Translations under genes and position numbers: made by a program | Shown: piece after piece, positions 50,588 through 122,406 of the stretch | Numbering within the stretch: the stretch's first letter is position 1 | Layout: every line of letters begins with the position of its first letter | Source: Octopus vulgaris | Lineage: Eukaryota | DNA: 124,000 nucleotides | Reading direction: 5' to 3' | Assembly (NCBI GenBank): GCA_951406725.2 | Contig: OX597819.1 | Location: forward strand, 25,192,001-25,316,000 | The notes under the pieces: generated by a model | What the model saw: only the letters and a program-made list of their open reading frames with translations | Database searches by the model: none | Told to the model about the DNA's origin: nothing

Positions 50588-50752
50588 ATAACAAATGGTC
50601 TAAATGGAGTAGCTGGACAAACTGCAGCTCTAAATGTGGCGGAGGTCTTCGGTACCGCAAACGTAACTGTCTTTCTTCTCACCCAGAGGTGTTGGCTTAT
50701 TGTAAAGGACCCCAAATGGAAGTGATGCATTGCAATATGCAACCGTGTCATG
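50588..50752 (+). CDS. SEMA5: Semaphorin-5-like exon, thrombospondin type-1 repeat
   Basis: Pyrimidine tract plus AG at 50586-87, GT at 50753; 165 nt, phase 1/1; NKWSKWSSWTNCSSKCGGGLRYRKRNC...CKGPQMEVMHCNMQPCH is a canonical WSxWSxW/CSxxCGGG/RxRxC TSP1. Confidence 0.93.
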
Positions 50753-50786
50753 GTAATTTAACCTTCTATGACAGCTTGACAATTTT

Positions 50787-50824
<38 letters not shown>

Positions 50825-51496
50825 ACTTTTCAATGATTTAATGAGATTTATAACTTTGGATAATTTCTTACAAATTCATCACTTTCTCCTCTTTACAAGA
50901 GAATCATTAAATATAACATAACGTAATATATTATAATACAATATAATACACTATAATGTAATATAATATAATAGAATATAACAACACAATAGAATACTGA
51001 ATATAAAATGGCACTAATATTAACCTTTTGATTCCAACCCACCTGAGACTGTCTTTGGTTCTATGATATATAAAATTTCTCTTTTAAAGTGATCCAAATT
51101 AAAGCCTGTTAAAATCTCACGTTAATCATGTTCCAAACACCTGCTTGATTATGACATTAGTCATTTTACTAAATTCTTCATTATTTTCAAAATCATTTGA
51201 GGTAAAGGCAGTGGATTTCTGGAGAGACATGGAAATGAAAAGGTTAAAGCATACAAGCAACTATTTTATTTTATGAATAAATTTGTCTTTTGGTGAAGGA
51301 ACATATTATAGAATAAATTGTATTTGATAAGATGAGATTCATTGAAACCTGTAATATTTTCTTTATATAATTTTCTAATTAATTTTTTATTAAATTCCCT
51401 CTTAAACTGAAATGTCTTAGACTTGCTTCTGTGCTATTTCCACCTCCATCTTTTATATATAAAAATTTGATTTGTATAGATCTCTAAGCTTTTTTC

Positions 51497-51545
<49 letters not shown>

Positions 51546-51546
<1 letters not shown>

Positions 51547-52680
51547 TAGCTGGTGTACCTGGTAATTCCTGGGGGTAAAGATGTTCTATTGAAATGCTTT
51601 ATAACTCTAAGAAAGCAATTTCATTATAACTTCCACAAAAGGTGTATTTTCCATCATGAAAAAAATATTAAAAAAACTGTCAGCTGGAGGAGGGAGAGAT
51701 TGCTGGAGGTTGGCAACTCTCATGCCATTGCATAATTTTAGGGGATCGAGGTTTCTTAAAAGCATAACTGGGGCTCCAACCTTTAGATGCAATTCATGCA
51801 GTGGTAGACCTGAAGGTGCAAGGCTATTGAAGAATTCAACGGGGTAATGAACAGCATCATTGGTGTGGAGTACAATATCAATTGACATGTATGTGCGACG
51901 ATTGTCAAGCAGTTGTTCCAGAAGGTGATTGTTTATGCCATCGACTGCAACATTTTTTGGCACCAAAATTGCAGTTTTCTCAGTTTTCTCAGCCAACAGT
52001 GGTCTGTGAATTGTGTGTTCAGATTGGGGAAAACTCTCACCAATAGTTCGTGTATATTTGACACCAAATTGCCAAAGGGTAAACTAATCTTCCCCTTCTG
52101 CTCAATAATTACAGAACCAGTTCCAATATCCATTAATTGCCTGCAGAAGTTCTGCATGTGTGCATCACCACCTAACTGCACTCTCATGTTTGTTGTGAGT
52201 TTCAACTTTCTAACCTTGCCCCAAAGGTATGAAGATTTGAGGCTCACACTTACCTCATCTGCTCTCGTCCCCTTTCGAATGACTGTGAGTGTTTGTCGAA
52301 AGTCTCCTGCAAGGAGTACTGTTAGGCCACCAATTAGTCTTGAGTTGCACCTCGGATCTTGAAGTAATCTGTCAAAAGCCCCCTTATGACTCATTGTTGC
52401 TTCATCCCAAATGATCAATTTGCACTCAGTGGATGACTTTGAGATCAGGCAGCTCATCCATCCTCCCCTGAGCGCATTTCAAGCTATTCACATAGGTATG
52501 AGTTGAATGAAGCATTGTCTGTAATTTTTGCAATCAGACGTTTGTCAACACCTTCATTCAGCCTGCACCATTGGTCAACTTCCTCATCGTCACCTCCCAT
52601 AAAATACACCTGGACAAATTTCAGCTCAGCATCTGGTAAAGCTCTTAGGCTTCCCACTTAATTATAGCATTGACACCTGA
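51546..52680 (-). mobile_element. Helitron fragment: PIF1 helicase, N-terminal remnant and 3' CTAG end
   Basis: IIWDEATMSHK...LLAGDFRQTL...TTNMRV; PVEFFNSL.PSGLP.HEL.LKVGAPVMLLRNLDP.KLCNG; KFVQVYFMG near 52600; minus strand ends CTAG|T at 51546. Confidence 0.92.
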
Positions 52681-53498
52681 TTTTGATATCAGAAAAAAAA
52701 TAAAAGAAAGAAAATGGAGAAATTGATTTATAAATACTGATTTATTGAAACAAATCTAGTTTTGAACAATATCAAACTCATAGAAGCTGCAATTGTTCCC
52801 ATGTACAATTAATTAATTCAAATAATTAATAATCCTCTGAATAACCCTAAACTTTAACTTTATACAACATAGCAATATTGTTTACAATATTTAACTATAG
52901 TACTACATGATAAGATTTCCCCTATTTCATTATCAATGGCCTGCTAGTGGCCAACCCCTTTAATTGTCAGTTAACATCTTGATTTAGGTTTTTCCTTTAC
53001 CAAATCTCATGATATTTCTTCTAATAAATCTTGATTTTTTTATGACTATACCCACTATGATTTCTGTCTACTCCCACAGCCCTACCCCAAACAGACACTG
53101 TCCCTTGTTCTCTCGGCTTTAGATATACAAGGATTTGATAAAACTAGTCTATAAATTAAAACTGACCCCATAAAAAACAGTGACAAGCAAAATCTGTAAC
53201 AAGTCTCTCTTCCTGATACCTTAGTAGCTTCTAAGCTGAAGTGAAGGCAGCATGTTCTTTGTCTATCTCCATAACTTCTTGGAGATTTTAAGTAAAATTA
53301 TACTAATGTGTCCATCTGTTTTAATTTAATTAAATTCTGTGTCTTTGTGCAACTGAGGATTGCTCTGTATTTAAATTGATGAAATGGTTGCATTGTTCAA
53401 TTAAATGAAGTTGCGTGAAATGATTGTACTGCATTACCTCTGGATATTCTTGTTGCTTATTTAGATTTATGTGTATATATATGTATATATATATAAGC

Positions 53499-53536
<38 letters not shown>

Positions 53537-53609
53537 TTGGAAATGGATGTATGCCATTCATTCATACAGTAATATAAATAAAATATATATATAGGCATAT
53601 ATACATACA

Positions 53610-53664
<55 letters not shown>

Positions 53665-54547
53665 GTATGTATGTATATACATATATCGGTACAGGACAAC
53701 ACATGTGCATTTATATATGCATATACATATATATGCATATGTATATATATGTATATGCATATACATATATATCCATATGTATATATGCATATAGATATAT
53801 ATGAATATATATGAATATATATGCATATATATGTATATGCATATATATATATATGCATATAAATATATATGCATATATATATATGCATATATATGTTTAT
53901 GCATACATATGTATGTGCATATATAAATGCATATATATATGTGTATTCGCATATATATATGCAAATATATATATATGCACATATATATATACATACACAT
54001 ATATATATGTATATATACATACACACATATACGCATACACCGCAAAAGCATATATTTCCATTTTTTTTTGAGTAGGTTTCATGTCTTTGTGCACATGTGT
54101 GTGCACATGCCTGTACATGTGTTGGTGTCTGAGGTAATAGCTTTCTTTTTTTTGACGACGAGGCAGCATTTCCGAATAGGTATGTAGCCTCAAGTGATTC
54201 GAATAATCACAAAAGCATCCGCACCTGCACCATCAAGTAATTCCTAATAGATATCAGTGCTATACAGGTTTAATTAAAACTTTGGCTTGCAACAGCTTAC
54301 AACTGTCAAGGAGATTTAAAGTATGAGACACAAAATAATAAGAAGAAATACGAATTCTAATGAAACTCGTAAAGAGATCTCAGGCTAAGACGTTGGCATC
54401 AAAGTGAAGTTGAGTCTTGTTAGGTTATAAAGTAATTTGATATTTTGATATGAATACATATGCATATGTATACATATGTGTGTTTTAGTATGTATATATG
54501 CAAATATATATATATATAAACGCACGCACATTTTATATATAATATAT

Positions 54548-54711
54548 AGTCGCAGGAGTGGCTGTGTGGTAAGTAGCTTGCTAATCAACCACATGGTTCC
54601 GGGTTCAGTCCCACTGTGTGGCATCTTGGGCAAGTGTCTTCTGCTATAGCCCTGTGCCGACAAATGCCTTGTGAGTGGATTTGGTTGACGGAAACTGAAA
54701 GAAGCCTGTCG

Positions 54712-54752
<41 letters not shown>

Positions 54753-55613
54753 CTGTGTTTGTCCCCCTAGTATTGCTTGACAACCGATGCTGGTGTGTTT
54801 ACGTCCCCGTTACTTAGCGGTTTGGCAAAAAAAGAGACCAATAGAATAAGTACTGGGCTTTCAAAGAATAAACCCCGGGGTTGATTTGCTCGACTAAAGG
54901 CTGTGCTCCAGCATGGCCGCAGTCAAATGACTGAAACAAGTAAAAGAGTAAAGAGTATATATATATATATATATATATATTACTCTTTTACTCTTTTACT
55001 TGTTTCAGTCATTTGACTGCAGCCATGCTGGAGCACAGCCTTTAGTCGAGCGAATCGACCCCTGGACTTATTCTTTGTAAGCCTAGTACTTATTCTATTT
55101 GTCTCTTTTGCCAAACCGCTAAGTTATAGGAACGCAAACACATCAGCATCAGTTGTCAAGCGATGTTGGGAGGACAAACACAGACACACAAACACATACA
55201 CATACATAAGTGTAGGAGTGGCTGTGTGGTAAGTTGCTTGCTTACCAACCACATGGTTCCAGGTTCTGTCCCACTGCGTGGCACCTTGGGTAAGTGTCTT
55301 CTACTATAGCCTCGGGCCGACCAAAGTCTTGTGAGTGGATTTGGTAGATGGAAACTGAAAGAAGCCCATCGTATATATGTATATATATATGTGTGTATGT
55401 GTTTGTGTGTCTGTGTTTGTCCCTCCCCAACATCATTTGACAACCGATGCTGGTGTGTTTACATCTCCGTAACTTAGCGGTTCGGCAAAAGAGGCCGATA
55501 GAATAACTACTAGGCTTACAAAGAATAAGTCCTGGGGTCGATTTGCTCGACTAAAGGCGGTGCTCCAGCATGGCCACAGTCAAATGACTGAAACAAGTAA
55601 AAGAGTAAAAGCG

Positions 55614-55645
<32 letters not shown>

Positions 55646-56605
55646 TAATCCTACAGCAGGCTAGAACCTTCTCCAGGAGGAAATGTATACACCACAGAAT
55701 GGCTAAGGAAATACCTTTGGCATTTTTTGTGTATGTGCGTGTATGTATGTGTGCATGCATGTTTCTCCTAATGGCAAATCAATGAATGCATACTTAAAAG
55801 TGCATATTTGTTAGTATGTGTATGCATGTACTTACACATCACTTTTGTGTTTAGACACAAAACACACATCTACATATATGAATGTAAATGATACATATGT
55901 ATCCATCTACATATGCTAGTAAGTATGTATGCACATATACATCTGTAAGTGCAAATTTGTGCATCTGCACATAATATATATAAGGTATATATAGGCGCAG
56001 GAGTGGCTGTGTGGTAAGTAGCTTGTTTACCAACCACATGTTTTCGGGTTCAGTCCCACTGAGTGGCACCTTGGACAAGTGTCTTCTACTATAGCCTCGG
56101 GCCGACCAAAGCCTTGTGAGTGGATTTGGTAGACGGAAACTGAAAGAAGCCCGTCCTATATATGTATGTATATGTATGTGCGTGTATGTTTGTGTGTCTG
56201 TGTTTGTTCCCCTAGCATTGCTTGACAACCGATGGTGGTGTGTTTATGTCGCCGTCACTTAGCGGTTCGGCAAAAGAGACTGATAGAATAAGTACTGGGC
56301 GTACAAAAGAATAAGTCCCAGGGTCGAGTTGCTCGACTAAAGGCGGTGCCCCAGCATGGCCGCAGTCAAATGACTGAAACAAGTAAAAGAGTAAAAGAGT
56401 AAAGAGTATATGTTACCTATTTCTGCCTACCCATATTTCCAACTCTCATTCTACCATGAAATAAGTTGGGTTTCTGGCTGTGTGGTAAGCAGCTTGCTTA
56501 CCAACCACATGGTTCGGGGTTCATTCCCACTGTGTGGCACCTTGGGCAAGTGTCTTCTACTATAGCCTCAGGCCAACCAAAGTCTTGTGAGTGAATTTGG
56601 TAGAG
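54548..56605. mobile_element. Cluster of five family A SINEs (one inverted)
   Basis: Copies about 54548-54955(+), 54980-55200(-), 55212-55610(+), 55993-56405(+), 56475-56605(+, partial). Confidence 0.88.
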
Positions 56606-57010
56606 GGAACAAGAACAGGACAGTGGAGACAGACAAGGAAACCGAACGAAAACAAACATGGAGGGTTATGCGACTCAATACTGTTTTCTCTCTTATCCTT
56701 TTCTCTAATTCTCTTTTCTCCACTTCACCGTTTTCTATCTGTCCCTCTCTTTTTCCCCTCTTTCTCCTTTTCTCTCTCGTTGCTCACACATAGCCATTGT
56801 CCATTTTTCTTTTCCTCCCGTGATCATCTGTCTTTTCTTTCAAGACTGTTCTAAGGACTAGACATATACTATCTCTTTTCTACCTTTTCCCTTGTCAAAG
56901 AAGATATTTCTCCAGCGTTCGCTATTTTACGCTCGTTCTTGTCTAACAGTCCACCATGTTTGTTTTCGTTTGGTTTCCTATATATATATGTGTATACACA
57001 TATATATGTA

Positions 57011-57051
<41 letters not shown>

Positions 57052-57159
57052 ATACATACATACATAGATACATACATGAATGTATGTATGTATATATGGA
57101 TATGCCTTGGTTTTGTCATATGGAAGAACAATATATTAAAACTTATAGAAATTCCTATT

Positions 57160-57480
57160 TCTGTGTGATACAGGATAATGGCGATGACAATATAACTGCG
57201 CTACTGCTGACACCTAAAACTGCCCAACTTAGAACGAAAATGAGAACTACCTGGACTCTAGTAAAAGAATTTCTGTGAGACAATTTTGTTAGACCCTTAT
57301 GGAACCAGTCTTCATTTCTTGACAAACACCATACAGTAATCAAGTTGTCTCTCGAATGTAATTCTATGAAGCTTTCACGAAACTCAGAGTCATGTGTCTT
57401 CATTTTATTAGTGTGATCATCCATAAATGATATTACACACCTATCCTTTTCCTTGTGGTTGAGTAGTCTATTTTTGGAAT
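57160..57480 (-). mobile_element. Degenerate APE-type LINE endonuclease remnant (tentative)
   Basis: Minus [36 protein letters not shown] loosely follows the TRID.IF.S...V....I...LSDH pattern. Confidence 0.35.
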
Positions 57481-57609
57481 ATGAATCACATCTGATCATG
57501 TATACACACACACACACATATGTATTTATGAATTTATCTGTGTGTATATCTAGATTTATATTTAGATATACATACGAGTGCGTGAGTTTATATATACATA
57601 CACACACAC

Positions 57610-57651
<42 letters not shown>

Positions 57652-57855
57652 GTGTATATATATATATGCATATATATATATATACATATATATATAACAC
57701 ACACACACACACACACAAATATATATACACACACACACACACACACATATGTATACAACCCTCCTTCTTTCCTTCTTTCCCGAGCGTCCAATAATACTAT
57801 ATTTGTTCTACGTCCTCGTGTTGTGTTTTTTTTTTGTGCTTTCTTGTTTGTATTA

Positions 57856-57891
<36 letters not shown>

Positions 57892-57957
57892 AAGCGACAA
57901 GTTCGCCAAGAGGTAAAGTTCCTTCTTTTTAGTGTTTCCAAGTCCAAATTGAGAAAT

Positions 57958-58020
57958 TTTGAGCTGACGAAAGAAATGCTGATTTTATTTGGCTAATCTT
58001 GAAACGTTGACGTACTCAAA
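57958..58020 (+). ncRNA. Type-I hammerhead ribozyme, sense strand of semaphorin-5 intron
   Basis: TTTGAG-CTGACGA-AAGA..GCTGA.TTGGC..TCTT-GAA-ACG.TTGA.CGT-A-CTCAAA: perfect 6-bp stem I, full core, GUA triplet (cut after 58014). Confidence 0.8.
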
Positions 58021-58201
58021 CGATCTATGTACTTGTGATATTTTTCTGTATTTACCTCCAAACCTTCGTGAGCTGTCTGGAGTAAACATTATCTGAGAGA
58101 AATTTTCTTTAAGTAGTAGAAATGGCTAAAAAAATTTTTTTGGCTGCTATTTCTACTACGTCCAGTATGTGGCAAAGTAATTTATTTTACTAAGCCCTAA
58201 T

Positions 58202-58246
<45 letters not shown>

Positions 58247-58607
58247 CATACATGCATGTATACATACATACATATATATATATAAGTATATTGTGCTCAC
58301 ACACATTTTCTCTTTGTCATTCTGTAATTCTGTGTGTCTATCCTGCTTTCTCTTTCTCACTCACTTACTCACCCACTCACTCACTCTCTCACTCACTCAC
58401 ACACCCTATCTCTATGTATATGTATAGGGTGGGAGAGAGACAGAGAGAGGAAGAGATATTATAAAACTAAGATTAATTAAGTAATGCTGGTTTCAGAATA
58501 AGCAACACATACATTAACTATATTAAATATGAACTATCCCGCATCTGTCTAGCTATCTATTTGCATGTGTGTACGCATGTGCATATATGTATATGTATAT
58601 ATATCTA

Positions 58608-58638
<31 letters not shown>

Positions 58639-58658
58639 ATATATATATATATATATAT

Positions 58659-58735
<77 letters not shown>

Positions 58736-58857
58736 GTACACACACATATGTACATACATACACATACATAGATATATGTTTATTCATCTGTTTAAACACA
58801 CACACACACGTACACATGTTTGCATATGTAACTATATGAAACATATTTTCATTATAG

Positions 58858-59004
58858 ATTCTACAGGGAAAGTTCCGTGGTCCCTTTGGTCAGCTTGCCA
58901 AGCAGAAGGAATTCGTTATCGCTACAAAATCTGTGGGAAGAAGGCGAAACATTATGGACATTGTAATGGACATAATGTTGAAATTGTCCAGTGTTTTACA
59001 CCTG
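58858..59004 (+). CDS. SEMA5: Semaphorin-5-like exon, last (truncated-type) TSP1 repeat
   Basis: AG at 58856-57, GT at 59005; 147 nt, phase 1/1; DSTGKVPWSLWSACQAEGIRYRYKICGKK...HCNGHNVEIVQCF parallels SEMA5 TSP1-7 (WSEWSDWSECEASGVQVRARQC..CSGNTTESRPC). Confidence 0.9.
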
Positions 59005-59022
59005 GTTAGTATAAGTATATAT

Positions 59023-59069
<47 letters not shown>

Positions 59070-59164
59070 TATATATGAGAGATAATGGTGTCATTGAGAC
59101 TCAAAGGTGTCAATGCTCTAATATCTACACAGCCTTGGTTTTTTATCTTATTACTCAAAAAATT

Positions 59165-59201
<37 letters not shown>

Positions 59202-59229
59202 GAGAAAGAAGCAACAAGAATGGATTAGT

Positions 59230-59320
59230 TTTTAGTACAATTGTTTCATTCAAAGACAGGCTTTATTACAAGTTGCAAAAATTGCAGCAGATAAAAGTGT
59301 CCCGTACTCATCAGCTAAAA
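59230..59320 (-). ncRNA. Type-I hammerhead, long stem II family (stem II partly decayed)
   Basis: Minus: TTTTAG-CTGATGA-GTACGG...GAAT-GAA-ACAATTGT-A-CTAAAA; homologous to 83912-83999 including the downstream AATCCATTCTTGTTGCT. Confidence 0.72.
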
Positions 59321-59921
59321 TACATATGAGTTCTCCAAACATCTTAGTGAGTGAGGCTATACTCATGAAGTATTGGAGATAATTTCATTTAAGGCAGATT
59401 TAGGTTGCAAGCAGATTTCCAAAGTTCCTTAATGATGATGCACAGACTTATCACAGGTTCTTAAAAGCTTATTAGCTTCACAGAGAAGATGAAGATGAAT
59501 TAATCCGTAGTGTAGATTTAAATTTCCAGAGATATGAGGAGGATGATGCACAGACTTATCACAGGTTTATATATATATATCAGGCACGAGTTAGTTGATA
59601 AGAAGACACACGTTGGACGAAGCGCGGGCAAACGGTGGGCGTAACTCGGACTCTCTCTATTGCATTGAGCAGTCGTAGTAGATCGGAGTTATCGAAAAGC
59701 CGTCGTCTCAGCGGCGGCGAGTTCGTCGAGTTTCTACAACTTCTACAAAGAACTACACAGATGATTTGCTTAGAGTGATTAAATGTTTGTGCTGTACATA
59801 AGCTAAATTCCTTCATTAAATTTACATTGCCTGCATAAATGCACAGCGTGGTATGGTAAGAACATTAGACTAATACCGAAAAATACTTTGGGAATGAGAA
59901 CCCAGGTTCGAAATTCCTTAA

Positions 59922-59965
59922 GACACCCGATGAAGTATGGAGAGTATATCTGCCCGAAACGTGTT
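59922..59965 (+). ncRNA. Inactivated hammerhead motif
   Basis: ACAC-CCGATGA (U4 to C), damaged stem II and a deletion after GAAACGT; same family as 60984-61105. Confidence 0.5.
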
Positions 59966-60983
59966 AACAACAAACAAGATGAGGACAAATATCTGTCAAT
60001 TGTAAATAAAAGGTTCTGAGTTAGGTGAAGAATAAATAATATAATATAATATATATATCAAGGGTTGAACTGATAGAATACAACGAGAAAATTTTAGACG
60101 AAAGCAGAGCAAACGGAAAGCTAGACAAAAACTTAACGGACGGGGAAAATAAGCAAAGGCACGAAACATGGAATATTCGCAGCTGAGTTTTCCTCGTCAG
60201 TCAATGAGCCAAAATATCATCGTAGTTTCGCCCCACTATCATTGAGACCACTCAATCTTGAAGGCGCCAGTGCCGTTAATAAGCTACTGGTAAAAAGCTA
60301 GCGAATGTATACTGAGACAGAAACAAACAAAACATTATATAAATGCAAAAGTTATATAAATACAATAGTTATGTTATATTATTCTGTTAAGAACTTAGTA
60401 GAGTACAGCATAAAGCTCGTCCACCTTCATATTTCACCCTGTGCTATCCAGCAGTAGTATTATACGTACTTCCAGATTTCCGTTTGAGCTTCTGTAGGTG
60501 TGAACAGATAACTGAAAAAAATTGAAGTCAAATTATTTCTACACAACATAGTTCTCCAGGCGTGTAGGTACATGTATGTGTATGTATTTGTATGTGTATT
60601 AGCGCACAGATTTATTTACATTTTCTGTAAATCTGTCTAATATATTTAAAAACGTAAGGCAGCGATCTGGACAAAATGCTTAGTAGCATCTCGTCCCGTT
60701 TTACATTCTGTGTTCAAATTCTGCCAAGGTAGACTCTATCCCTCATTCTTTCGGGTTCGACAAAGTAAGTACCTGTTAAGCACTGGGGTCAATGAAATCG
60801 GCTTACCCCTCCCCGAACTTGCTGGCCTTGTGCCCAAATTTAAAACCAATATATTAAAAACGTACACACAAACATATATTTATATAAATATCTATATTTA
60901 AGAGATAAGGAATTATTACATTATATGCTTTATTTACATTATTTACATTCGACGGATATTTGTCCTCATCTTGTTTTGTTGTT

Positions 60984-61029
60984 AACACAACGTTTCGGCT
61001 GATATATCCTCCAGCCTTCTTCAGGTGTC
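60984..61029 (-). ncRNA. Minimal hammerhead (intact core), left arm of a 218-bp palindrome
   Basis: Minus: GACAC-CTGAAGA-A-GGCTG..CAGCC-GAA-ACGT-T-GTGTT. Confidence 0.7.
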
Positions 61030-61059
61030 TTGGGAAACCCAGGTTCGAAATTTCCCCAA

Positions 61060-61105
61060 GACACCCGTTGAAGGCTGGAGGGTATATCAGCCGAAACGTT
61101 GTGTT
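61060..61105 (+). ncRNA. Hammerhead with mutated core, right arm of the palindrome
   Basis: GACAC-CCGTTGA-A-GGCTG..CAGCC-GAAACGT-T-GTGTT (U4C and A6U). Confidence 0.55.
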
Positions 61106-61377
61106 AACAACAAACAAGATGAGGACAAATATCCGTCGAATGTAAATAATGTATATATTTATATATTTACATACATCAGGCTTCCGTCTCCTAAATCCAC
61201 TCACATGGCCTTGGTTGGCCTAAGCTGTAATAAAAGATTCTAGCCGATGGTGTCACGCAGTAGGATTGAACTGTGAACCATGTGGTTTGGGAGGCAAACA
61301 TTTTACCACACAACCACGCCTGTGCCTCAGTTTGGTTAATTATTTTTCATCCTGTCTTATTTTTATCTTTTTACCAG

Positions 61378-61775
61378 AATATGACACCAGTTATGTAACG
61401 AGCAGCCACTACCCATCCTTCGCACTGATCCACCTAATTGCCGTGGCTGTAATAGGTTTCACTATAGGAGCTCTATTGACCGGCACCATACTGCATCATA
61501 TCCACAAGTGCCAGACCAGTCGAAAAGTGCGCATTACCAAACAAAAGAACGAAAAAGCCCAATGTAATATCAATCACGCGCCTTTCACATTATCATCATC
61601 ATCGTTGTCACAAGCCAGTCTCGTCTATCTGAACAATGCCCCATCATGTCAACCCATAATGCTCCCGCCGCCGCCACCAATCTCCAATAATATCAATGAG
61701 CTGAACATCAATGAGTTTTCAACGCTGAAGAGAAACTGTGACCTGAGGACTAATTTGGCACTGAATGACCTTTGA
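61378..61775 (+). CDS. SEMA5: Semaphorin-5-like terminal exon: transmembrane helix and cytoplasmic tail, stop TGA
   Basis: AG at 61376-77, phase 1; FALIHLIAVAVIGFTIGALLTGTIL resembles the SEMA5 TM (F..FHMIAVG); tail has LPPPPP and ends LRTNLALNDL*. Confidence 0.9.
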
Positions 61776-61995: not shown

Positions 61996-62916
61996 TAAAA
62001 CGAAAACGGGAGAGGGTGACTGAATTTGTAAAAGTATTTATATGAAATTAAATGAAAAATAAAGGAAAAAAAAAAAAAGGGAGAGAGAGGGAGAGAGAAT
62101 GGGTAGACAGAGACAAAGAAGGTAGAAAGAGTCGATAAAAGAGAAAAAGAAAACTAAGGGAGCACTTTTCATTGTATAATGCATTATATACATGAACACG
62201 GACAAATGTGTGTGTCTGTGTGTGTACGTGTGTTTGTGAGTATGTGTGTGTGTGTACGTGTGTTTGTGTGTGCGTGTGTATACTCTTCCAGCATGAAGTT
62301 GCATTGAACTCTTTTATGCTTTTGTATCACATGAGCAAAAACCACACACAGATACACACACGACCACACACACACACACACATACACACACACATACATA
62401 CATGCACACACATGCAGACGCGCACACATGCCTCACTCACATAATTTTGTGCATTTACTCAGTGTGTAAATTGATCACTACTTCAACAAGTGTAACGGAG
62501 TCCATGTTTCACTGACGAGGTCATTAGACCGAAACATTCCTAGAGTTATCTCCCATACCTGTCAGACGATATTAGTAATTTACTAAAATCGTATTTCTTT
62601 CGAATCAGCTCAATAATCCTCCACCCATTAAATATGTTTCTAATAACTTAACTACAAGTAACATTTTATTCTTTTAGCCGTTGCTTGTTTCAGTCATTGG
62701 ACTACGACTACAGCGGGGCGCCGTCTCAAAGCGTTTTAGTCCAAGATATTGACTCCTACTCCAGTATTTATCTTAAAGCCTGGTACATATAGTATTGGCC
62801 AGTTTTACCGAACCGCAAAGTTGGGGCAACTTAAACAAACCAACACCTGTTATCAACCAGAACAAACACATAGGTGCCATGCAGTGGGACTGAACCCACA
62901 AATGTATATAAACATG

Positions 62917-68902: not shown

Positions 68903-69715
68903 GCACACATAGCACCAAAATTGTGAAACCTTTGAAACGCGTACTCTATAGATGTGCGACCGATAGTGTTTACAATATTCGAGTTGCTTTTAATTCGAAA
69001 TTCAGCAACTTGGAAGCTTGGTTGGTTGGCCGGTTCGAGAATGGGAGTCTTGGTAGTCGGTCTTCTATGACAATTGAGTGTCCGCGCTAAGCTCGGCATC
69101 AATATGGTGCTGAAGAGGGAGCTCATCAGGACCAGGTTGTCTAAGGAGGGTCGCTTCGGCCCAGGGCGGATACGCAACAGGCAAAAGACTCTGTGTCGAG
69201 CTGTAGTGGGATCGCGCCTGTAAATAGTCGTCGGCTGGCAGCCTATCCGATATAATTGAACTCCAACCTTTTTAGAAAGAGCCAAAAAAAAGAAAAAGGC
69301 GGTGCTCCATCATGGCCACAGTCAAATGAATGAAACAAGTAAAAGAGTAAAAGAGTAAAAGAGTATGTGCCACGCTACAGCATATCAGCGAACAGACTTC
69401 ACAGTATAGGCATATATGTCGTAGACCGGTGATTCAGTACGTTTCGAGGTGAACCGAGTAAATGATGCTGAAGAGCGGTAACGATAGCGAAATATCGATA
69501 CCTGTCATTCTAGTTTATATCGAGTGCGTTGTCTCGTCACCTCGGCGTCGAGTCGGGAGCTTTTCCAAGATGCTATACCATAGCATATAGGTGTATAAAC
69601 AAAACATATACACTATGTATAATGTACACATATGCACGCACGCACGCACGCACGCTTGCACAGATGAATACGCGCCCGCATATAGACACACGCACATACA
69701 CACACATGCACACGT

Positions 69716-90849: not shown

Positions 90850-93800
90850 TTGGAGAACTGGTTAGTTCTTTCCCATTTAGGAGCTATTTTTTTTGTTGCT
90901 AAAATCAAAGATGGCGAACAAAAACCGTCCATCCGCTGAAAATAACAGCGGGGTATCCGCAAGACAGAAGTGCCGAGTTGAACAAGACAGCGACTGTTTA
91001 GCAACAACAACAAGATTAACGCACGTGGAACGTATGAAAATGAATTCCCCTTACTTCTTTCTTCCCTTTTACCACCGCAGAAACAAGAGAAGAAAATCAC
91101 TAAAACATCAACAACACAAGCGAAAACACTTCCAACGCCACCGCTACCACCGTTGCCAGCAGCAGCAGCAGTAATAGTAGTGGTAGCAATATCAACAATA
91201 CGAGAGACAGTTAGGGCAGCAGCAACAGCGCTGGTAACAACAACAACAACAACAGCGATAGCAAAGGTAACAACAGCGATAGCAAAGTTATCAACAACGC
91301 CAATAACACCAGCCAAAACAATTACAACAACAGCAGCAGAAGTAGTAGGAGCTGCAGCAGCAACAACAGCAACGACAGCAACAACAACAATGCCCACGTT
91401 ACCAGCAACAACAAAAACACTTTCGCAGCGGCAGTAGCCAAAATGAGACCACAATTCAGCCTAGGTCTCACAAACAAAGATGAAATGTTTGCTCAAGTCT
91501 GGAAACTCACCAAACAAGAGCTAACCTGGGCAAATCTAACTATTCCGGCAGGAGCCATCGAAGAAGTGGAGAGAAGGGCAGTATATTTCATATGCATCTT
91601 AGGACAGAAGAAAAAAGTGGCTTTAATAGCACAAGCAGATATTGAAGCTGCGCTGAGATGTATCAGGAATGACACCGAATACATAGCGAGAAGCTGACAA
91701 TACGACACCGTTTCTATTCTTTTGTAAGTCAGAAGCCCTCGCTATGAAGCACTCAATGACTCCTTGCAAAACCATCTAGATCATAATGGGAAAAAGAACA
91801 GCTCGTGTCGCATTCCCAGGATTCCACCAGAACTTGATAAGTGGTGGGTTCTGGGATGCTTAATCGAGCAAGGGTCAGATACTGTCCCAATGGAGGTGAC
91901 AAAAACTGCCAGGTAGGACTAGTTTGGGGTTGACCTGGAGATACTTCTCCAGATCGGACCAGAAAACGCAAAAAAATCTTGGAGGGTAATACACATAATG
92001 ACTGAAGGCAAAAGATCACATTGTTTCGTTTGTGGAGAAACAACCCATTTTCGAGCTTCTGCCATCAAGTGATAAAAGGTGCAAGGGATTGAAGGTCTCC
92101 ACTGCTGCCTACGCCGAGGTAAAGACCACAACCAGCACCAGCACCCCGATCGTGAAACCTATATCGAAACTTTTAAAGTGGTTCCCCCACCACTAATTAC
92201 GGAAGTCGAACCACCCGAACTTAACGAGACACTGGAAGGTGAGTAAACCTTTCTTCTCTCTTTTTAGCTTGCGAACATGACCATATTAAGAGTAGGAAAT
92301 TTAAATGTTCGACGACTATCAGATCTTTGCATCTGTTAGTCTGCCGAGAATGGGAAATGGGGTGGCAGTGCTGTTAAGGAATGATCTGGATCTCGCGATA
92401 AGGTCGATCTTCGGGACCTTTGACGGTAAATTGGTGGACCTGGACTTGAGCAATAGTGAAGGTGGTGCCTTCAGACTGGTGGCCGTATACGCCCCTACCG
92501 GTGCCAAACGGCCGAATTTCTTTAGGCGTTTCGACGCTTTTCTGGGTACGTCTCACCCTTCACTGTTAGTGGGAGACTGGGACCGTATCTTAGACGCACG
92601 CTGGGATTGTGTGGAAATAGCTGATAGAAGCATGGGGTACAAAAGTCTCAAGTACCTGATCAGCCAGTTCCAGCTGTCTGACAAGTACCGACGAGATTTC
92701 CGTAATGCGCCAGTGTGGACCTGCACCAACCGTATCGGGTCATCTAGATCGTTTATAGTCAGGATTTTCAGTAGGAAAATAACCAGTGACTGTGTAAAAT
92801 GTTCCCATTTTAAAACGGTCGTCTATTCAGATCCAGAGTTTGTAATCTGTACGATAGGCCTAGATAAGACGCGTAGGTAAGGACCCGGTTACTGGAAGCT
92901 GAACATGTCGTTTCTGCTACGTAAGGCGTACTGGGACCGGGTCAACAATTTAGTTAAGCAAAAGTTGACAGGGGTGGGGATTGCCAACAACAAGTGGTGG
93001 GGCCTCTCAAAAGAGAGATTGAAGTAATATCGATAGGGTTTAGCAAAGAAGTGGCGTTAGAAAAATAGAAAGGGAGATGAGCTAGTAGCTAAGTTAGACG
93101 AGGCTATTTGTAGTAGCATTGCAACCAACCTGCTAGCAGCGAGAATGGCATTAGACTATTTCTTCAATGTGAAACAGGAAGTTTGCGTTGTCAGAGCTAA
93201 GGCGCGTGATCTGAGAAACGAGGGTACAAAAGCTGTTCGATGGACCCAGGTGGCAGAGGCACAGCGTGGTAAAACAACAATTCGGTTTTTGACGAACCGA
93301 GAGTGATACGGGCTGAGCGATTCCTGGCAGATGTGTGAGGCCTTACATCAGCACTTTGCTCAGTTGTTCGCGAGGAGTAGCGGGTGAGAGATGGTAGCGG
93401 ATTTCAGTCATTACATCGACGGCTTTCCACGCCTCTCGACGGCTTTCCACGCCTCTCGACGGCTTTCCACGCCTCTCGACGGCTTTCCACGCCTCTCGAC
93501 GGCTTTCCACGCCTCTCGACGGCTTTCCACACCTCTAGACGGCCGACGCCGAGCGCTGCGAAAAGCAGATAGTTTCAACCGAAATTCAAGATGCCCTTCA
93601 GGATGCCCTTTTCGGATGGTCTGCCCTATGAGCTTCACGGAAATATGCCAGACTTGTTCAATCTCCTCGAAGCGCTCTACTGCAACTGGCTGCAGAACGG
93701 GTGTGCTCCCAGTTCTGTGAGCAGGGGTGTAGTGACGCTGATAAAGAAAGACGAAAACAAGAGTGGTACACTAGATAACTTCAAGCCCATAACTCTGCTA

Positions 93801-94257
93801 AACACAGAGTTTAAAATTTTGGCGAAGGTGTTAGCGAAGTGGTTGGCGCTTGTCGTCAACGATTTGGTTGGGGAGGCGCAAATCTGTGCAATCCCGACCA
93901 AGTCCATTCGCGACAACCTCCATCTAATGCGATACATCATAGAAAGGGTAAGGTGTAAACCTGGGGCTCTGATCAATTTAGATACATCGAAAGCATTCGA
94001 TAGAGTCGACCATCTGTACCTGTAGGCTGTTATCAAAGCAGTTGGCTTCGGCCCCGTCTTCAGAGGTTGGATCGCTTGCAATGCACAGTGGCATCTGTTC
94101 AGTGGTCAAAGTTAATGGCCACCTCTCGGAGCAGTTTCAGATCTCCGGATCGGTCCGTCAAGGGTGCCCTTACACCTCCTTTCTGTACGTATTGACTCTT
94201 CAGCCTTTATTGCAGAAGCTGGTGCAGCTGCAAGGCATTCCGCTCGAACCTGGTCGC
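90850..94257 (+). mobile_element. Tx1/L1-like non-LTR retrotransposon, degenerate, 3'-truncated
   Basis: ORF1 from ATG 90911 with CFVCGETTH knuckle; ORF2 IRVGNLNV, FRLVAVYAP, LLVGDW, YWKLN, PITLLNTEFKILAKVLA, LDTSKAFDRVDH, SVRQGCP; many stops. Confidence 0.9.
93415..93545. repeat. 20-bp tandem repeat (~6 copies) inside the Tx1-like ORF2
   Basis: Unit CGACGGCTTTCCACGCCTCT. Confidence 0.92.
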
Positions 94258-94680
94258 AGAAGATCTGGCATTTCAAGGCAGTTACAATACCAGTGATTAT
94301 AGGAGCACTTGGAATGATAAAAAAATAAAGGAACTGAAAATTATTTGAGGATAATCCCTGGCTCATCGTCTATGCAGAACGTGCAAAAGATTATCGTAAC
94401 TGGTACGTCACACGTGTTAAGAAGAGCAGTCCCACTGTGAATTTTCTTTCCTTTATTTCTTCTTCATTTTCTTTGTTTTCATTTTTTTCATTGTTTCTTC
94501 CCATCTTTTTCTCTCTGTCTTTCTTTCCCTTTTTTTATCTGTCACATGACTTTGTAAAAATAAAACGATCTGGTGTCCTTATTTTAATGGCTTATCAATG
94601 TATACAGGGAATGTCTTTGTCCTAGGTGTCGGGAAGACATTTGACAAGAAATGGAAACAAAATTGAAAGAAGTGGATAAT
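94258..94680 (+). mobile_element. R4/Dong 3' fragment (subfamily 2)
   Basis: IWHFKAVTIPVIIGALGMIKK...TGTSHVLRRA plus a 3' UTR homologous to 99300-99420. Confidence 0.82.
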
Positions 94681-95445: not shown

Positions 95446-98400
95446 GCCGACTACGGCTGCTATAATGGTACGATTATAATTGTAACGGCAATGATGGCCG
95501 TCTCCCCACGAGCCAATCAAAGCTAAAAAATGATAACATTATCGTAGCACCAAAATGTTTTTGGAAACTAAAAGGAAAACTAAATCAGTATACCAAATCG
95601 CTTGTCCTATGGTTAATCTGGAAGCGCGTCCTCCAGGGAAGAGCCAGCCTGGGATCGAAAAGTCATCAACTGGCACAAACTCTTCTCCGAATACGGACAT
95701 GGATGGTCACTTGAACGGGAAATCCCCCAAATCGAGCCCTCCAAGTTCACCACCACAACCACCACAGAAAGAAAAATGTAAGCGGAACAAATGGACCCGA
95801 GAAGAGTATAAAGAAGTAATATACGCTTATTACTATGCATTAGGTAGGCCATCTCAAGAGAGACACACCGCAAACTCTTACAGTATATGGAGAACACGGA
95901 ATCAAGACAGTAGGCCCTATTTGGACGAGAACAAATTAGCAAATGTGAGGAGGGATATCTTTAGAAATAACAGACTCACAGACAGTGAAATAAGCGCGAT
96001 CAAGCACGCAACGGAAAATGACATAAATATAAGACACAAAGGAAATGAAGAAGCAAATGAACAGTATAGCCCACCACGAGGCTTAATTGAAAGACTGCCA
96101 TCTGACCAAAGTACGCAAAGGCCTGAAGATACAAGAAATTCTATTGTACCTGTTAAAGATAGCCAGGAAAACGAAAGAACAACAGTAACTGAAGATCTCG
96201 CATTTGCTGAAGAACACAGAGAGTCTATAGCAGAAATGAGGCAGAAAATCCTGAATACGCTTGAAGTTGTAAGACATACAAGTATGAATGATAGAGAACC
96301 GCTTCATAAACTCTCAAATACAAACCAAAATAAAAAACAAATCCAAATTGGCAACTATGTAACAAATGAAATAATACGAGAATTAAAACCTGATTTTACT
96401 GAGTTAAATGAAATTATTTACGCTTCTGCTAGGGCAATTGAAACCAGCTGTATGCCCCCGAAAAAACAAAGAAAACAAAACCTGGGAAGAAATCAAACTT
96501 GGAGAAGTAAAATTGAAAAAGAGATTGAATTTATGAGAGGGGAAATATCAATATTAAATGAACTAATATGTGGAAATGATGTAAGATCCAGAACAGGAAG
96601 AAAGATGAAGAGAAAATTTGGATCCTCACCAAGAGAAGAACTGATATCAATAAAAGAAACGCTGAAACAAAAAGTCCAAGCAAAAGCCCAAAGAATACGA
96701 AGATTTGAGAAGAGAAACAAGTTTTACAAGCAAAATAAGCTGTTCACATCCAATGCCAAAAAATTCTACAGAGAAATAGGGAAGGAGAAAGTAACCGTTA
96801 AAGACCCCCCTCCCATGGAAGAAGTTCAAAACTTTTGGAAAAGGATTCGGAGTGACAAGAAGACGTACAACATAAATGCAGACTGGATTATACAAACTGA
96901 AGGATCCTACCAAAATTTATAACAACAAGCATGGGAAGACATCACAATAGCAGACCTAAGAAAGGCACTCACGAAGGCCCATAATTGGAAATCCCCGGTA
97001 AAGATAGGGTGCCGAATTTCTGGCTCGCATCGCTCCCGTGCGCACACGGTAAGCTAGTTCAGCTGCTCAATGGAATTATGAGAGACCCAAAGAAAACACC
97101 TGAATGGTTAGCAAGTGGCATTACTTACCTACTCCCAAAGAATAACGAAACCAACCTTCCAAAAAACTATCGGCCTATAACCTGTCTATCCACCACGTAT
97201 AAAATCCTAACATCTATCCTGGCGGAGAAAACATATGCATTCATGGAGAAGAACGATATTTTCCCCATTGAACAAAAAGGGTGCCGCCGAGGCTCTTACG
97301 GATGCAAAGATCAACTGCTAATCAATCGTATGATCCTTGAGAACTGTCACAACAAGCGCAGAAATCTCAGCACCGCATGGATTGACTATAAAAAGGCCTT
97401 CGACAGTATACCGCATCCATGGATCTTGAGATCGCTGGACATCTTCAAAATTTCCCCTGTGATTTCAAACTTCCTGAAGCACAATATGTCGTTGTGGAAT
97501 ACGAATCTCCAATTATACCAATCTAATGGAGTACTTGCCTCAGAAAATATAAACATCAACTCTGGAATTTTTCAAGGTGACTCAATTTCACCTTTAATAT
97601 TCTGCATAGCCCTAATACCCCTTACAAGTGAATTAAACAGAACAGGGTATGGGTATAAAATTGCCAATAAAAAAATAAGCCATCTATTTTATATGGATGA
97701 CTTAAAACTTTATGGTAAAGACAATAATGAACTTGAAGGCCTATTGCGCACCGTGAAATCATTCAGCGATGACATCGGGATGGAGTTTGGACTTGAGAAG
97801 TGTGCCAAGGCCACTTTCCAGAAAGGGAAAGTGAAGACCACAAATTCAGTCGTGTTAGATGTTGACACAGTCATAAGAGAGCTTGAGCAAGAACAAACAT
97901 ACAAATATTTAGGGATAAATGAAGGCTCTGGTATTCAGCATGCAAGCATGAAAGAGAAAATCAGGAAGGAATGTTATAGGAGAGTTCGTGCAGTCCTGAA
98001 ATCTGAACTAAATGCACGTAACAAGGTGTTAGCTATAAATTCCCTAGCAGTTCCAGTTGTTACTTATAGCTACAATGTGTTGAACTGGAATATGAGTGAA
98101 GTAAAGAATATAGATAGAAAAATACGCAAGCTGCTGAGTTGTAATAGGATGCACCACCCAAAGGCAGACGTAGATCGCCTTTACCTTCCCAGAGCCCAAG
98201 GAGGTCGAGGCCTGATCCAATTTGAACTAGCTTACAAAACAACCACAATTGGACTGGCCAAATATCTCGAAATATCGAATGACTGGATGCTAAAGCTCGT
98301 GGAAAATCACGAGAGGCGAAAGAAGCTTCATTCTATCATCAAGGAAAGCAAAAAATTTGCTATTGATCTCGTGCAGGATACCCAAACTGAACAACCCGAG

Positions 98401-122361: not shown

Positions 122362-122406
122362 ACACAACGTTTCAGCTGATTTACTCTCCAGTTTTCATCA
122401 GGTGTC
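122362..122406 (-). ncRNA. Hammerhead motif of the 61-kb family, stem II partly decayed
   Basis: Minus: GACAC-CTGATGA-A-AACTG..CAGCT-GAAACGT-T-GTGT. Confidence 0.5.

What the first reader, a model, noticed from the sequence alone, without database searches (positions are those of the whole stretch)
57958..58020. Apparently intact hammerhead on the sense strand of the semaphorin-5 pre-mRNA
Seen: complete core, perfect 6-bp stem I (TTTGAG/CTCAAA), 3-bp stem III with a UUGA loop and GUA site, about 840 nt upstream of the acceptor at 58858. Caveat: the pair closing stem II is A-U, not the usual G-C. Inference: co-transcriptional cleavage could affect splicing of the downstream TSP and TM exons, lower Sema5 output, or yield transcripts lacking the TM exon.
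Basis: partly seen in the sequence, partly recalled or inferred. Interest (0 to 1): 0.75.

Follow-up and report, generated by a model that had tools for sequence, protein, structure and literature searches.

The report
Lone hammerhead-like motif in Sema5 intron
A 63-base stretch inside an intron of a cephalopod semaphorin-5 gene really does spell out the minimal hammerhead ribozyme consensus, but nothing beyond the consensus supports it, so it is most likely an unselected look-alike that cuts slowly or not at all in the cell.

Summary
Window 57958-58020 (+) reads stem I UUUGAG/CUCAAA, core CUGACGA...GAAA, a 30-nt stem II closed by A-U, stem III ACG-UUGA-CGU and a GUA site, with cleavage after 58014. 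It lies on the sense strand of the 8.1-kb intron between two TSP1 exons of a SEMA5-like gene, 843 nt from the acceptor.

Such a match is uncommon by chance. Shuffles and decoys gave 0/300 and 0/600. Random sequence gave about 2.5e-4 to 4e-3 per window, which still means about 5 to 90 per 2.7-Gb genome.

Nothing independent supports a working ribozyme:
- No Rfam hammerhead model matches.
- The 10.1-11.1 pair is A-U.
- The helices are AU-rich, and no loop-loop or pseudoknot contact was found.
- The hammerhead fold is 3-4% of the ensemble alone and 1e-4 to 1e-5 with native flanks.
- There is no tandem or second copy.
- Orthologous introns could not be retrieved.

A true minimal-hammerhead repeat family elsewhere in the window looks different and folds correctly.

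My estimates are about 60% unselected match, about 27% relic or solitary genuine hammerhead, and about 5% regulator of Sema5. Interest is low to moderate until cleavage or conservation is shown.

The parts
57958..57963 (+). Helix I, 5' strand (UUUGAG, positions 2.6-2.1)
   Evidence: Pairs perfectly with 58015-58020. Pair probability is 0.84 in the isolated 63-mer but 0.008 or less with 100 nt or more of native 5' flank.
57964..57970 (+). Core box 1, CUGACGA (C3-A9, N7 = C)
   Evidence: Direct reading. CTGANGA occurs 73 times in the window on both strands, against 47 in shuffles.
57971..58000 (+). Helix II element, 30 nt: AAGA/UCUU (4 bp, closing pair A10.1-U11.1), 3x3 internal loop, GCUGA/UUGGC (5 bp with 2 G-U), loop UUUUAU
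   Evidence: Constrained fold. The closing pair is A-U rather than the highly conserved G-C (PMC4209133, PMC3088659).
58001..58004 (+). Core box 2, GAAA (G12 A13 A14 A15.1)
   Evidence: Direct reading.
58004..58013 (+). Helix III hairpin ACG-UUGA-CGU (A15.1-U16.1 plus 2 bp, tetraloop). The 10-mer is self-complementary if two G-U wobbles are allowed.
   Evidence: Direct reading. Pair probability is only 0.13 in the isolated RNA and 0.3 or less in context. This form (2 bp plus tetraloop) is the one described for invertebrate type I hammerheads (PMC7229834).
58014..58015 (+). Predicted scissile bond: after A17 (58014), before C1.1 (58015). Triplet GUA.
   Evidence: Position follows from the consensus numbering. 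No cleavage data exist.
58015..58020 (+). Helix I, 3' strand (CUCAAA, positions 1.1-1.6)
50753..58857 (+). Host intron (8,105 nt, phase 1) of the SEMA5-like gene, rich in microsatellites and repeats
   Evidence: GT at 50753-50754 and AG at 58856-58857. The flanking exons 50588-50752 and 58858-59004 both hit Pfam TSP_1.
58858..59004 (+). Downstream exon encoding the last TSP1 repeat
   Evidence: Pfam PF00090 at E 2.8e-6. Splice sites read.
61378..61775 (+). Last exon: transmembrane helix, cytoplasmic tail and stop codon
   Evidence: ORF and splice acceptor. 56-59% identical to cephalopod ORFs P0002 and P0003.

Best explanation
The 63 nt are a solitary sequence that happens to satisfy the minimal (core plus three helices) hammerhead consensus. 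It is not a maintained ribozyme.

Shown:
- The consensus is complete and lies in the sense pre-mRNA.
- The helices are short and AU-rich.
- The stem II closing pair is A-U.
- No element that could dock helix I on helix II was found.
- The element is single-copy in the window.
- Secondary-structure modelling puts the hammerhead fold at 3-4% of the ensemble in isolation and 1e-4 to 1e-5 once 100 nt or more of native flank is present.

Inferred:
- As a 'minimal' hammerhead it could show slow, Mg-dependent self-cleavage in a test tube.
- At sub-millimolar free Mg2+, and in competition with alternative folds, cleavage would be far slower than the time needed to transcribe the remaining 843 nt and splice the intron.
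- It should therefore have no measurable effect on Sema5 splicing or output.

Its origin is most likely chance in AT-rich intronic DNA. A decayed retroelement hammerhead is the main alternative origin and is listed as a rival.
For: 1. No hammerhead family of Rfam 15 matches at gathering score, nor at E<=10 in 601-nt or 91-nt searches.
2. The MFE of the 63-mer is not the hammerhead fold (z = -0.88). The hammerhead fold is -9.2 against -9.6 kcal/mol and 3% of the ensemble, with stem III pair probability 0.13.
3. With native flanks the stem I probability falls to 0.008 or less and the full-fold fraction to 1e-4 to 1e-5, at 15, 25 and 37 C.
4. A10.1-U11.1 replaces what is described as the most conserved pair of the consensus apart from 15.1-16.1 (PMC3088659; PMC4209133).
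5. Loop-loop or pseudoknot contacts raise activity by orders of magnitude at low Mg2+, and a human intronic hammerhead lacking its pseudoknot is inactive at 0.5 mM Mg2+ (PMC3088659). I could find only trivial 4-bp A-U complementarity here.
6. There is no tandem repeat and no second copy. The only similar stretch is a 39-nt block at 62584-62621 (-), which has a 2-nt insertion in the core and no downstream half.
7. The flanking (TA)n arrays are not special, because there are 62 such arrays in the window.
8. A bona fide minimal-hammerhead repeat in the same window (60978-61034, -) has the bulge, G10.1-C11.1 and a 6-bp helix II, and folds into the hammerhead shape as its MFE (frequency 0.37, z = -2.2). 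The candidate resembles it only in the 9-mer GAAACGUUG.
9. Chance matches of this quality are expected at about 5 to 90 per 2.7-Gb genome. The literature also expects consensus matches by chance in large databases (PMC3088659).
Against: - The match is rare for one window. None of 300 shuffles and none of 600 decoy descriptors reach it, and the rate in random sequence is 2.5e-4 to 4e-3 per window.
- All 13 helix pairs are Watson-Crick, and no all-Watson-Crick hit appeared in 1 Gb of random sequence.
- A 6-bp helix I and a 2-bp helix III with a quasi-palindromic tetraloop are the canonical form of invertebrate type I hammerheads (PMC4209133, PMC7229834).
- Hammerhead-bearing repeats demonstrably exist in this genome, so a relic origin has a real prior. 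One of those copies also carries A10.1-U11.1.
- The Rfam negative is weak evidence, because Rfam also misses those repeat hammerheads.
- Thermodynamic models ignore tertiary contacts and co-transcriptional kinetics.
- Conservation could not be tested at all.
Confidence: 0.62

Rival explanations
1. The motif is a relic or solitary copy of a retroelement-borne type I hammerhead (non-LTR retrozyme, SINE or Penelope-like element). It descends from a real ribozyme, may still cleave weakly, is not selected for any role in Sema5, and has at most incidental effects.
For: - The window holds a family of minimal hammerheads in short repeats (4 copies, 2 with intact cores), so such elements are common in this genome.
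- Metazoan type I hammerheads sit in low-GC repeat units of about 300 bp and have a 2-bp helix III capped by a tetraloop (PMC7229834). The unique segment here is 313 bp at about 30% GC, lying between (TA)n arrays that are the preferred target of some Penelope-like elements (PMC8557442).
- The helix III 10-mer ACGUUGACGU is self-complementary with two G-U wobbles, as expected for hammerheads that work as dimers (PMC4209133).
- The low per-window chance rate also fits this reading.
Against: - There is no tandem partner and no second copy in 124 kb.
- There is no sequence similarity to the hammerhead family present in the window.
- There is no bulge after A9, no G10.1-C11.1, and the helix II is long and irregular instead of compact.
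- (TA)n flanks occur about every 2 kb here.
- The 313-nt segment is only mildly structured (z = -1.95), and most of that comes from an unrelated hairpin.
Confidence: 0.27
2. The motif is a maintained intronic ribozyme that cleaves the Sema5 pre-mRNA co-transcriptionally. It thereby lowers full-length output or favours transcripts that lack the last TSP and TM exons, in the manner proposed for the vertebrate intronic hammerheads and the CPEB3 ribozyme.
For: - Sense strand, intronic, complete core, and 843 nt upstream of the acceptor.
- There are precedents for intronic self-cleaving ribozymes: the RECK and C10orf118 hammerheads (PMC3088659), and the CPEB3 ribozyme, whose half-life matches the transcription time to the next exon (PMC10274809 abstract).
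- All flanking exons are phase 1, so exon loss would stay in frame.
Against: - Everything listed for the best explanation applies here too. Most important are the missing tertiary stabiliser, the A10.1-U11.1 pair, the weak helix III (monomers with such helices cleave poorly; PMC4209133, PMC7229834) and the negligible predicted population of the fold in context.
- From my own knowledge of published minigene work (Dye et al. 2006; Fong et al. 2009, not re-read here), ribozyme cuts inside introns do not prevent splicing unless cleavage is very fast.
- No conservation evidence is available.
Confidence: 0.05
3. The motif is an intronic box C/D snoRNA. It would have terminal stem UUUGAG/CUCAAA, a C box within CUGACGA, an internal CUGA as D' box, and a D-like UUGA near the 3' end.
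For: The only Rfam matches over 57958-58035 are to C/D snoRNA families (snoR12, ceN111, snoR60, SNORD57), spanning exactly the same terminal stem. Animal snoRNAs are typically intronic.
Against: - Scores are 11-14 bits against gathering scores of 39-47, with E values of 2.8-8.
- The C box deviates from RUGAUGA at two positions.
- There is no CUGA D box next to the terminal stem. The nearest candidate is UUGA, 4 nt away from it.
- The resemblance follows from the known similarity between CUGAUGA and RUGAUGA.
Confidence: 0.02

Closest known systems
Minimal hammerhead ribozyme (core plus three helices, without peripheral tertiary contacts)
   Same: All invariant core nucleotides are present, along with the A15.1-U16.1 pair, an NUH site (GUA), three helices, and type I topology with helix I open.
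   Different: A10.1-U11.1 replaces G-C. Helix II is a 30-nt irregular AU-rich element. Helix III is only 3 bp. Activity is untested.
Canonical metazoan type I hammerheads of non-LTR retrozymes and satellite repeats (Schistosoma, newt/axolotl, mussel, coral)
   Same: Type I topology, a 6-bp helix I, a helix III of 2 bp plus a tetraloop that is (quasi-)palindromic, and a low-GC context of about 300 bp.
   Different: It is not in tandem repeats and has no second copy. It has no recognisable loop 1/loop 2 interaction, no compact 4-bp helix II, and no G10.1-C11.1.
Minimal hammerheads of Penelope-like elements (Cervera & de la Pena 2014), represented in this window at 60978-61034 (-) and 122355-122410 (-)
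   Same: CUGANGA...GAAACG core with a C15.2-G16.2 palindrome, and a longer than usual helix II. They share the 9-mer GAAACGUUG.
   Different: The candidate has no extra nucleotide between A9 and 10.1. It has a helix III hairpin and a different helix I. It shows no sequence homology to that family.
Vertebrate intronic hammerheads HH9 (RECK) and HH10 (C10orf118), and the intronic CPEB3 HDV-like ribozyme
   Same: Solitary motif on the sense strand of an intron of a protein-coding gene. The proposed effect on pre-mRNA processing is the same idea.
   Different: Those ribozymes are conserved across mammals or amniotes, are stabilised by tertiary or pseudoknot contacts, and have been shown to cleave. 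None of this is shown here, and the Rfam models for them do not match.

Membership tests
Hammerhead ribozyme (any type) | Invariant core: C3 U4 G5 A6 N7 G8 A9, G12 A13 A14, A15.1-U16.1, H17 | tested here: met
   Direct reading at 57964-57970, 58001-58004, 58013 and 58014.
Hammerhead ribozyme (any type) | Three base-paired helices radiating from the core | tested here: met
   Helix I has 6 bp, helix II has 4 bp plus an extension, and helix III has 3 bp including 15.1-16.1. All are Watson-Crick. They are formally present but weak: the full fold is 3-4% of the ensemble.
Hammerhead ribozyme (any type) | G10.1-C11.1 closing pair of helix II (highly conserved, not absolutely required) | tested here: not met
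   The pair is A57971-U58000. The conservation is stated in PMC3088659 and PMC4209133. Natural exceptions exist (U-U in PMC3088659, compensatory changes in PMC2837043).
Hammerhead ribozyme (any type) | Tertiary contact between helix I and helix II (loop-loop or pseudoknot), needed for activity at physiological Mg2+ | tested here: inconclusive
   Helix I has no internal loop or closing stem. Only trivial 4-nt A/U complementarity exists between loop II and the flanks (inspection). Such contacts cannot be excluded by sequence alone.
Hammerhead ribozyme (any type) | Match to curated covariance models (Rfam Hammerhead_1, _3, _II, HH9, HH10) | tested here: not met
   There is no match at gathering score and none at E<=10 in 601-nt and 91-nt searches. 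Caveat: the repeat-borne minimal hammerheads of this window are also missed.
Hammerhead ribozyme (any type) | Conservation of the core with covariation in the helices among homologues | not testable with these tools
   No orthologous intron or paralogous copy could be retrieved.
Hammerhead ribozyme (any type) | Site-specific self-cleavage giving 2',3'-cyclic phosphate and 5'-OH ends | not testable with these tools
   This needs a bench assay or RNA-end mapping.
Metazoan non-LTR retrozyme type I hammerhead | Located in tandem repeats of about 150-450 bp | tested here: not met
   Tandem Repeats Finder shows only microsatellites in 56000-60000. BLASTN of 57890-58212 against the window finds no other copy.
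Metazoan non-LTR retrozyme type I hammerhead | Short helix III (1-2 bp beyond 15.1-16.1) capped by a small palindromic loop | tested here: met
   CG-UUGA-CG. The 10-mer ACGUUGACGU is self-complementary with two G-U wobbles (sequence; criterion from PMC4209133 and PMC7229834).
Penelope-like-element minimal hammerhead | Extra nucleotide between A9 and 10.1, G10.1-C11.1, 6-8 bp helix II, no helix III hairpin, and occurrence in families or near other copies | tested here: not met
   A bulge reading gives worse pairing. The closing pair is A-U, and a helix III hairpin is present. There is no homology to the family copies at 59.9, 61.0 and 122.4 kb.
Box C/D snoRNA | C box RUGAUGA and D box CUGA juxtaposed by a terminal stem | tested here: not met
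   The C-like box CUGACGA has 2 deviations. There is no CUGA next to the 3' stem strand (UUGA lies 4 nt away). Rfam snoRNA scores are 11-14 bits against 39-47 needed.

The most novel reading that the evidence does not exclude
The motif is a genuinely active, evolutionarily maintained solitary hammerhead in an intron of a cephalopod axon-guidance gene. It would be the first invertebrate counterpart of the vertebrate intronic ribozymes (HH9, HH10, CPEB3). It would tolerate an A10.1-U11.1 pair and tune the ratio of full-length, membrane-anchored Sema5 to truncated or degraded transcripts in neural tissue.
Probability: 0.05. Interest if true: 0.7.

Novelty: not a real feature. Interest (0 to 1): 0.27.

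Why it matters
If the motif were an active, conserved ribozyme, it would extend gene-embedded self-cleaving RNAs from vertebrates to cephalopods. It would also tie one to a neural guidance receptor, in a lineage known for unusual RNA-level regulation.

As it stands, the case mainly shows how far a clean consensus match can be from a demonstrated ribozyme. The motif is simple enough that a cephalopod-sized genome should hold a handful to dozens of equally good matches by chance.

The more solid by-product is that the same window carries a real, multi-copy family of minimal hammerheads in short repeats. That family gives a local picture of what genuine hammerheads look like in this genome.

Tried and rejected
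1. Rfam at gathering score and in permissive mode gave no hammerhead hit. I then found that Rfam also misses the true minimal-hammerhead repeats of the window, so I gave this negative little weight.

2. 'Insertion into a (TA)n microsatellite', as for Penelope-like elements, was rejected as evidence because the window has 62 pure (TA)n arrays, roughly one every 2 kb.

3. 'Retrozyme monomer folding into a rod' was not supported. The 313-nt segment has z = -1.95, driven by one hairpin.

4. The 39-nt block at 62584-62621 (-) that resembles the 5' half (BLAST E 0.003) does not extend and lacks an intact core. At most it hints that the 5' half belongs to an old repeat.

5. The C/D snoRNA reading was rejected.

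6. Every route to orthologous DNA failed:
- The spliced C-terminal SEMA5 fragment found only a cuttlefish partial model, and its locus L001 lacks the orthologues of exons B-D. It also found a 911-bp Logan contig covering the last exon only.
- Exact look-ups of 10 ORFs found nothing.
- An ORF spanning the motif found nothing.
- phmmer of the last exon against cluster representatives found only a short ORF.
- Pattern scans of metagenome and viral contigs found nothing.

7. The reverse-transcriptase ORF at 96985-99240 found nothing above 68% identity and no octopus names, so the species could not be fixed.

Full report
**What is there.** Window 57958-58020 (+) reads UUUGAG-CUGACGA-[30 nt]-GAAA-CG-UUGA-CG-UA-CUCAAA. 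In hammerhead numbering this gives:
- Helix I of six Watson-Crick pairs (57958-63 with 58015-20).
- Core C3-A9 at 57964-70.
- A helix II element at 57971-58000: AAGA/UCUU, then a 3x3 internal loop, then GCUGA/UUGGC with a UUUUAU loop.
- G12 A13 A14 A15.1 at 58001-04.
- A helix III hairpin: A-U, C-G and G-C with loop UUGA.
- A GUA site with the scissile bond after A58014.

The topology is type I. A descriptor scan that I wrote finds this locus as the only hit in the window on either strand, apart from one weak match at the loosest setting.

**Context.** The + strand carries exons of a semaphorin-5-like gene.
- Exon 258-440 hits Pfam PF23260 'SEMA5B-like TSP-1' at E 2.7e-23.
- Exons 50588-50752 and 58858-59004 hit TSP_1.
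- Exon 61378-61772 encodes a transmembrane helix and cytoplasmic tail followed by a stop codon.
- All junctions are phase 1 with GT/AG.
- The closest named protein is SEMA5 of the cuttlefish Acanthosepion pharaonis, 83% identical on the first of these exons.

The motif is therefore in the sense transcript, inside the 8,105-nt intron 50753-58857, with the cleavage site 843 nt upstream of the acceptor. I could confirm 'cephalopod' but not 'octopod'. A reverse-transcriptase ORF of the window finds nothing above 68% identity and no octopus names.

**Is it more than chance?** For a single window, yes. For a genome, no. Thresholds below are minimum base pairs in helices I, II and III.
- None of 300 dinucleotide shuffles reaches 6, 4, 2.
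- None of 600 decoy descriptors with permuted core strings, run on the real window, reaches it. Nine of 600 reach 4, 3, 2.
- In 1 Gb of random sequence of window composition, 3 hits reach 6, 4, 2 when G-U is allowed. That is 7e-4 per window and about 16 per 2.7-Gb genome.
- In the same 1 Gb, 17 hits have at least 12 pairs distributed in any way (0.004 per window, about 92 per genome). None has only Watson-Crick pairs.
- Ranked by the energy of the hammerhead fold, 1 of 61 random hits is as good as the candidate's -9.2 kcal/mol (2.5e-4 per window, about 5 per genome).

Whether this counts as significant depends on how many windows the first stage read, which I do not know. Perreault et al. say explicitly that consensus matches are expected by chance in large databases (PMC3088659).

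**Independent support for a ribozyme: none found.**
- No Rfam hammerhead model matches, even at E<=10 in a 91-nt search.
- The only weak hits over the motif are C/D snoRNA models at 11-14 bits. They reflect the CUGAUGA/RUGAUGA resemblance and fail the D-box test.
- The 63-mer's MFE is not the hammerhead (z = -0.88).
- The hammerhead fold is 0.4 kcal/mol above the MFE and makes up 3% of the ensemble, because GACG of the core pairs with CGUUGACG and stem III is populated at only 0.13.
- With native flanks, helix I is out-competed. Its probability is 0.2 or less with 50 nt of 5' flank and 0.008 or less with 100 nt or more. The full fold drops to 1e-4 to 1e-5 at 15, 25 and 37 C.
- These are secondary-structure models. 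They ignore tertiary contacts and folding kinetics, so they count as evidence rather than proof.
- The 10.1-11.1 pair is described as the most conserved pair of the consensus apart from 15.1-16.1 (PMC3088659) and as a hallmark that separates real motifs from random ones (PMC4209133). Here it is A-U.
- Peripheral loop-loop or pseudoknot contacts raise activity by orders of magnitude at low Mg2+, and a human intronic hammerhead without its pseudoknot is inactive at 0.5 mM Mg2+ (PMC3088659). I found no candidate contact beyond trivial A/U complementarity.
- Monomeric hammerheads with such short helix III cleave poorly (PMC4209133, PMC7229834), and there is no second copy to form a dimer.

**Points in its favour.**
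- A 6-bp helix I and a helix III of 2 bp plus a tetraloop are exactly the form described for invertebrate type I hammerheads (PMC4209133, PMC7229834).
- The helix III 10-mer ACGUUGACGU is self-complementary if two G-U wobbles are allowed.
- All 13 helix pairs are Watson-Crick.
- The unique segment between the flanking (TA)n arrays is 313 bp and low in GC, like a retrozyme unit. However, (TA)n arrays occur about every 2 kb here (62 in the window), and the segment is only mildly structured (z = -1.95).

**A local yardstick.** While scanning with a relaxed descriptor I found a real hammerhead-bearing repeat family in the window.
- 60978-61034 (-) reads CCCAAGACAC-CUGAAGA-a-GGCUGG...UCAGCC-GAAA-CG-UU-GUGUUAAC. 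This is the Penelope-like-element 'minimal' architecture: an extra nucleotide after A9, G10.1-C11.1, a 6-bp helix II, no helix III hairpin and a CG palindrome.
- It has an inverted partner with a dead core at 61055-61111 (+).
- A further copy at 122355-122410 (-) has an intact core and, notably, A10.1-U11.1.
- A degenerate copy lies at about 59915-59975 (+).
- The intact copy folds into the hammerhead shape as its MFE (frequency 0.37, z = -2.2), unlike the candidate.
- Rfam does not detect this family either, so the Rfam negative for the candidate carries little weight.
- The candidate shares only the 9-mer GAAACGUUG with the family. That 9-mer occurs 4 times in the window against about 0.9 expected, and 3 of the 4 occurrences are the family itself.

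**Conservation.** This would be decisive, and I could not test it.
- The protein collections hold only a partial cuttlefish SEMA5 model, whose locus stops before the relevant exons, and a 911-bp contig covering the last exon.
- Exact look-ups and ORF-based searches around the motif found nothing.
- DNA pattern scans of metagenome and viral contigs found nothing.

**Mechanism and verdict.** My weighting is as follows.

| Explanation | Weight |
|---|---|
| Unselected consensus match | ~0.6 |
| Relic or solitary copy of a retroelement hammerhead, possibly still weakly active | ~0.27 |
| Maintained ribozyme that modulates Sema5 | ~0.05 |
| C/D snoRNA | ~0.02 |

- Even if the RNA cleaves in vitro as a minimal hammerhead, the functional inference needs cleavage to compete with transcription of 843 nt and with splicing. 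That is a matter of tens of seconds to a few minutes.
- The CPEB3 ribozyme illustrates this kinetic matching (PMC10274809 abstract).
- From my own knowledge of published minigene work (Dye et al. 2006; Fong et al. 2009, not re-read here), only very fast ribozymes in introns disturb splicing.
- A minimal, AU-rich hammerhead with A10.1-U11.1 and no tertiary stabiliser is not expected to be fast at cellular Mg2+.
- The finding is therefore a legitimate candidate for a cheap bench test, but it is not evidence of ribozyme control of Sema5.

Noticed in passing
window 60978-61034 (-), 61055-61111 (+), 122355-122410 (-), ~59915-59975 (+): This is a multi-copy family of short repeats carrying a Penelope-like-element-type minimal hammerhead: CUGANGA, one extra nucleotide, a 6-bp helix II, then GAAACGUU followed by helix I. 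Two copies have intact cores. The 61-kb pair forms a ~220-bp inverted repeat, and the 122-kb copy ends in (TA)n and has A10.1-U11.1. All copies have a tRNA B-box-like GGTTCGAAATTCC just upstream, which suggests a SINE-like element. Rfam does not detect them.
   Followed up: partly
window 68986-69271 (+): A full-length metazoan SRP (7SL) RNA gene lies about 7 kb downstream of the SEMA5 stop codon. It scores 188.9 bits against a gathering score of 70 (E 1e-49) and is followed directly by a TTTTT run.
   Followed up: partly
window 58113-58159 (+): A strong 47-nt hairpin, AGUAGUAGAAAUGGCUAAAAAAA/UUUUUUUGGCUGCUAUUUCUACUAC, sits about 100 nt downstream of the motif. Its energy is -20.8 kcal/mol (z = -5.5, 0 of 200 shuffles as good). 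It gives only a chance-level miRNA model hit, and it is unexplained.
   Followed up: partly
window 62504-62538 (+) and 62584-62621 (-): A second hammerhead-like half-motif, CUGACGA-GGUC-AUUA-GACC-GAAA, has a G-C closing pair but sits inside a simple hairpin with no helix I or III. About 60 nt away, on the other strand, is a 39-nt block similar to the 5' half of the candidate (BLAST E 0.003) with a 2-nt insertion in the core. These may be fragments of an old repeat, downstream of the SEMA5 stop codon (probably 3'UTR).
   Followed up: partly
window 95537-99240 (+) and 92305-94293 (+): Long ORFs of non-LTR retrotransposons lie downstream of the gene (461 aa and 752 aa; the 752-aa ORF matches RVT_1 relatives). 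The best database relative is only 68% identical. Many copies of a short interspersed repeat (recurring translated motif ...GCVVSSLLTNHMVPGSVPL...) and 62 (TA)n arrays fill the introns.
   Followed up: partly
window 258-61775 (+): The four C-terminal SEMA5 exons are all phase 1 and span 61.5 kb, with one intron of about 50 kb. The database holds no octopus SEMA5 fragment in the 163-518 aa length range that could be searched, and the cuttlefish model P0001 runs into repeat-derived junk after the exon equivalent to 258-440.
   Followed up: partly
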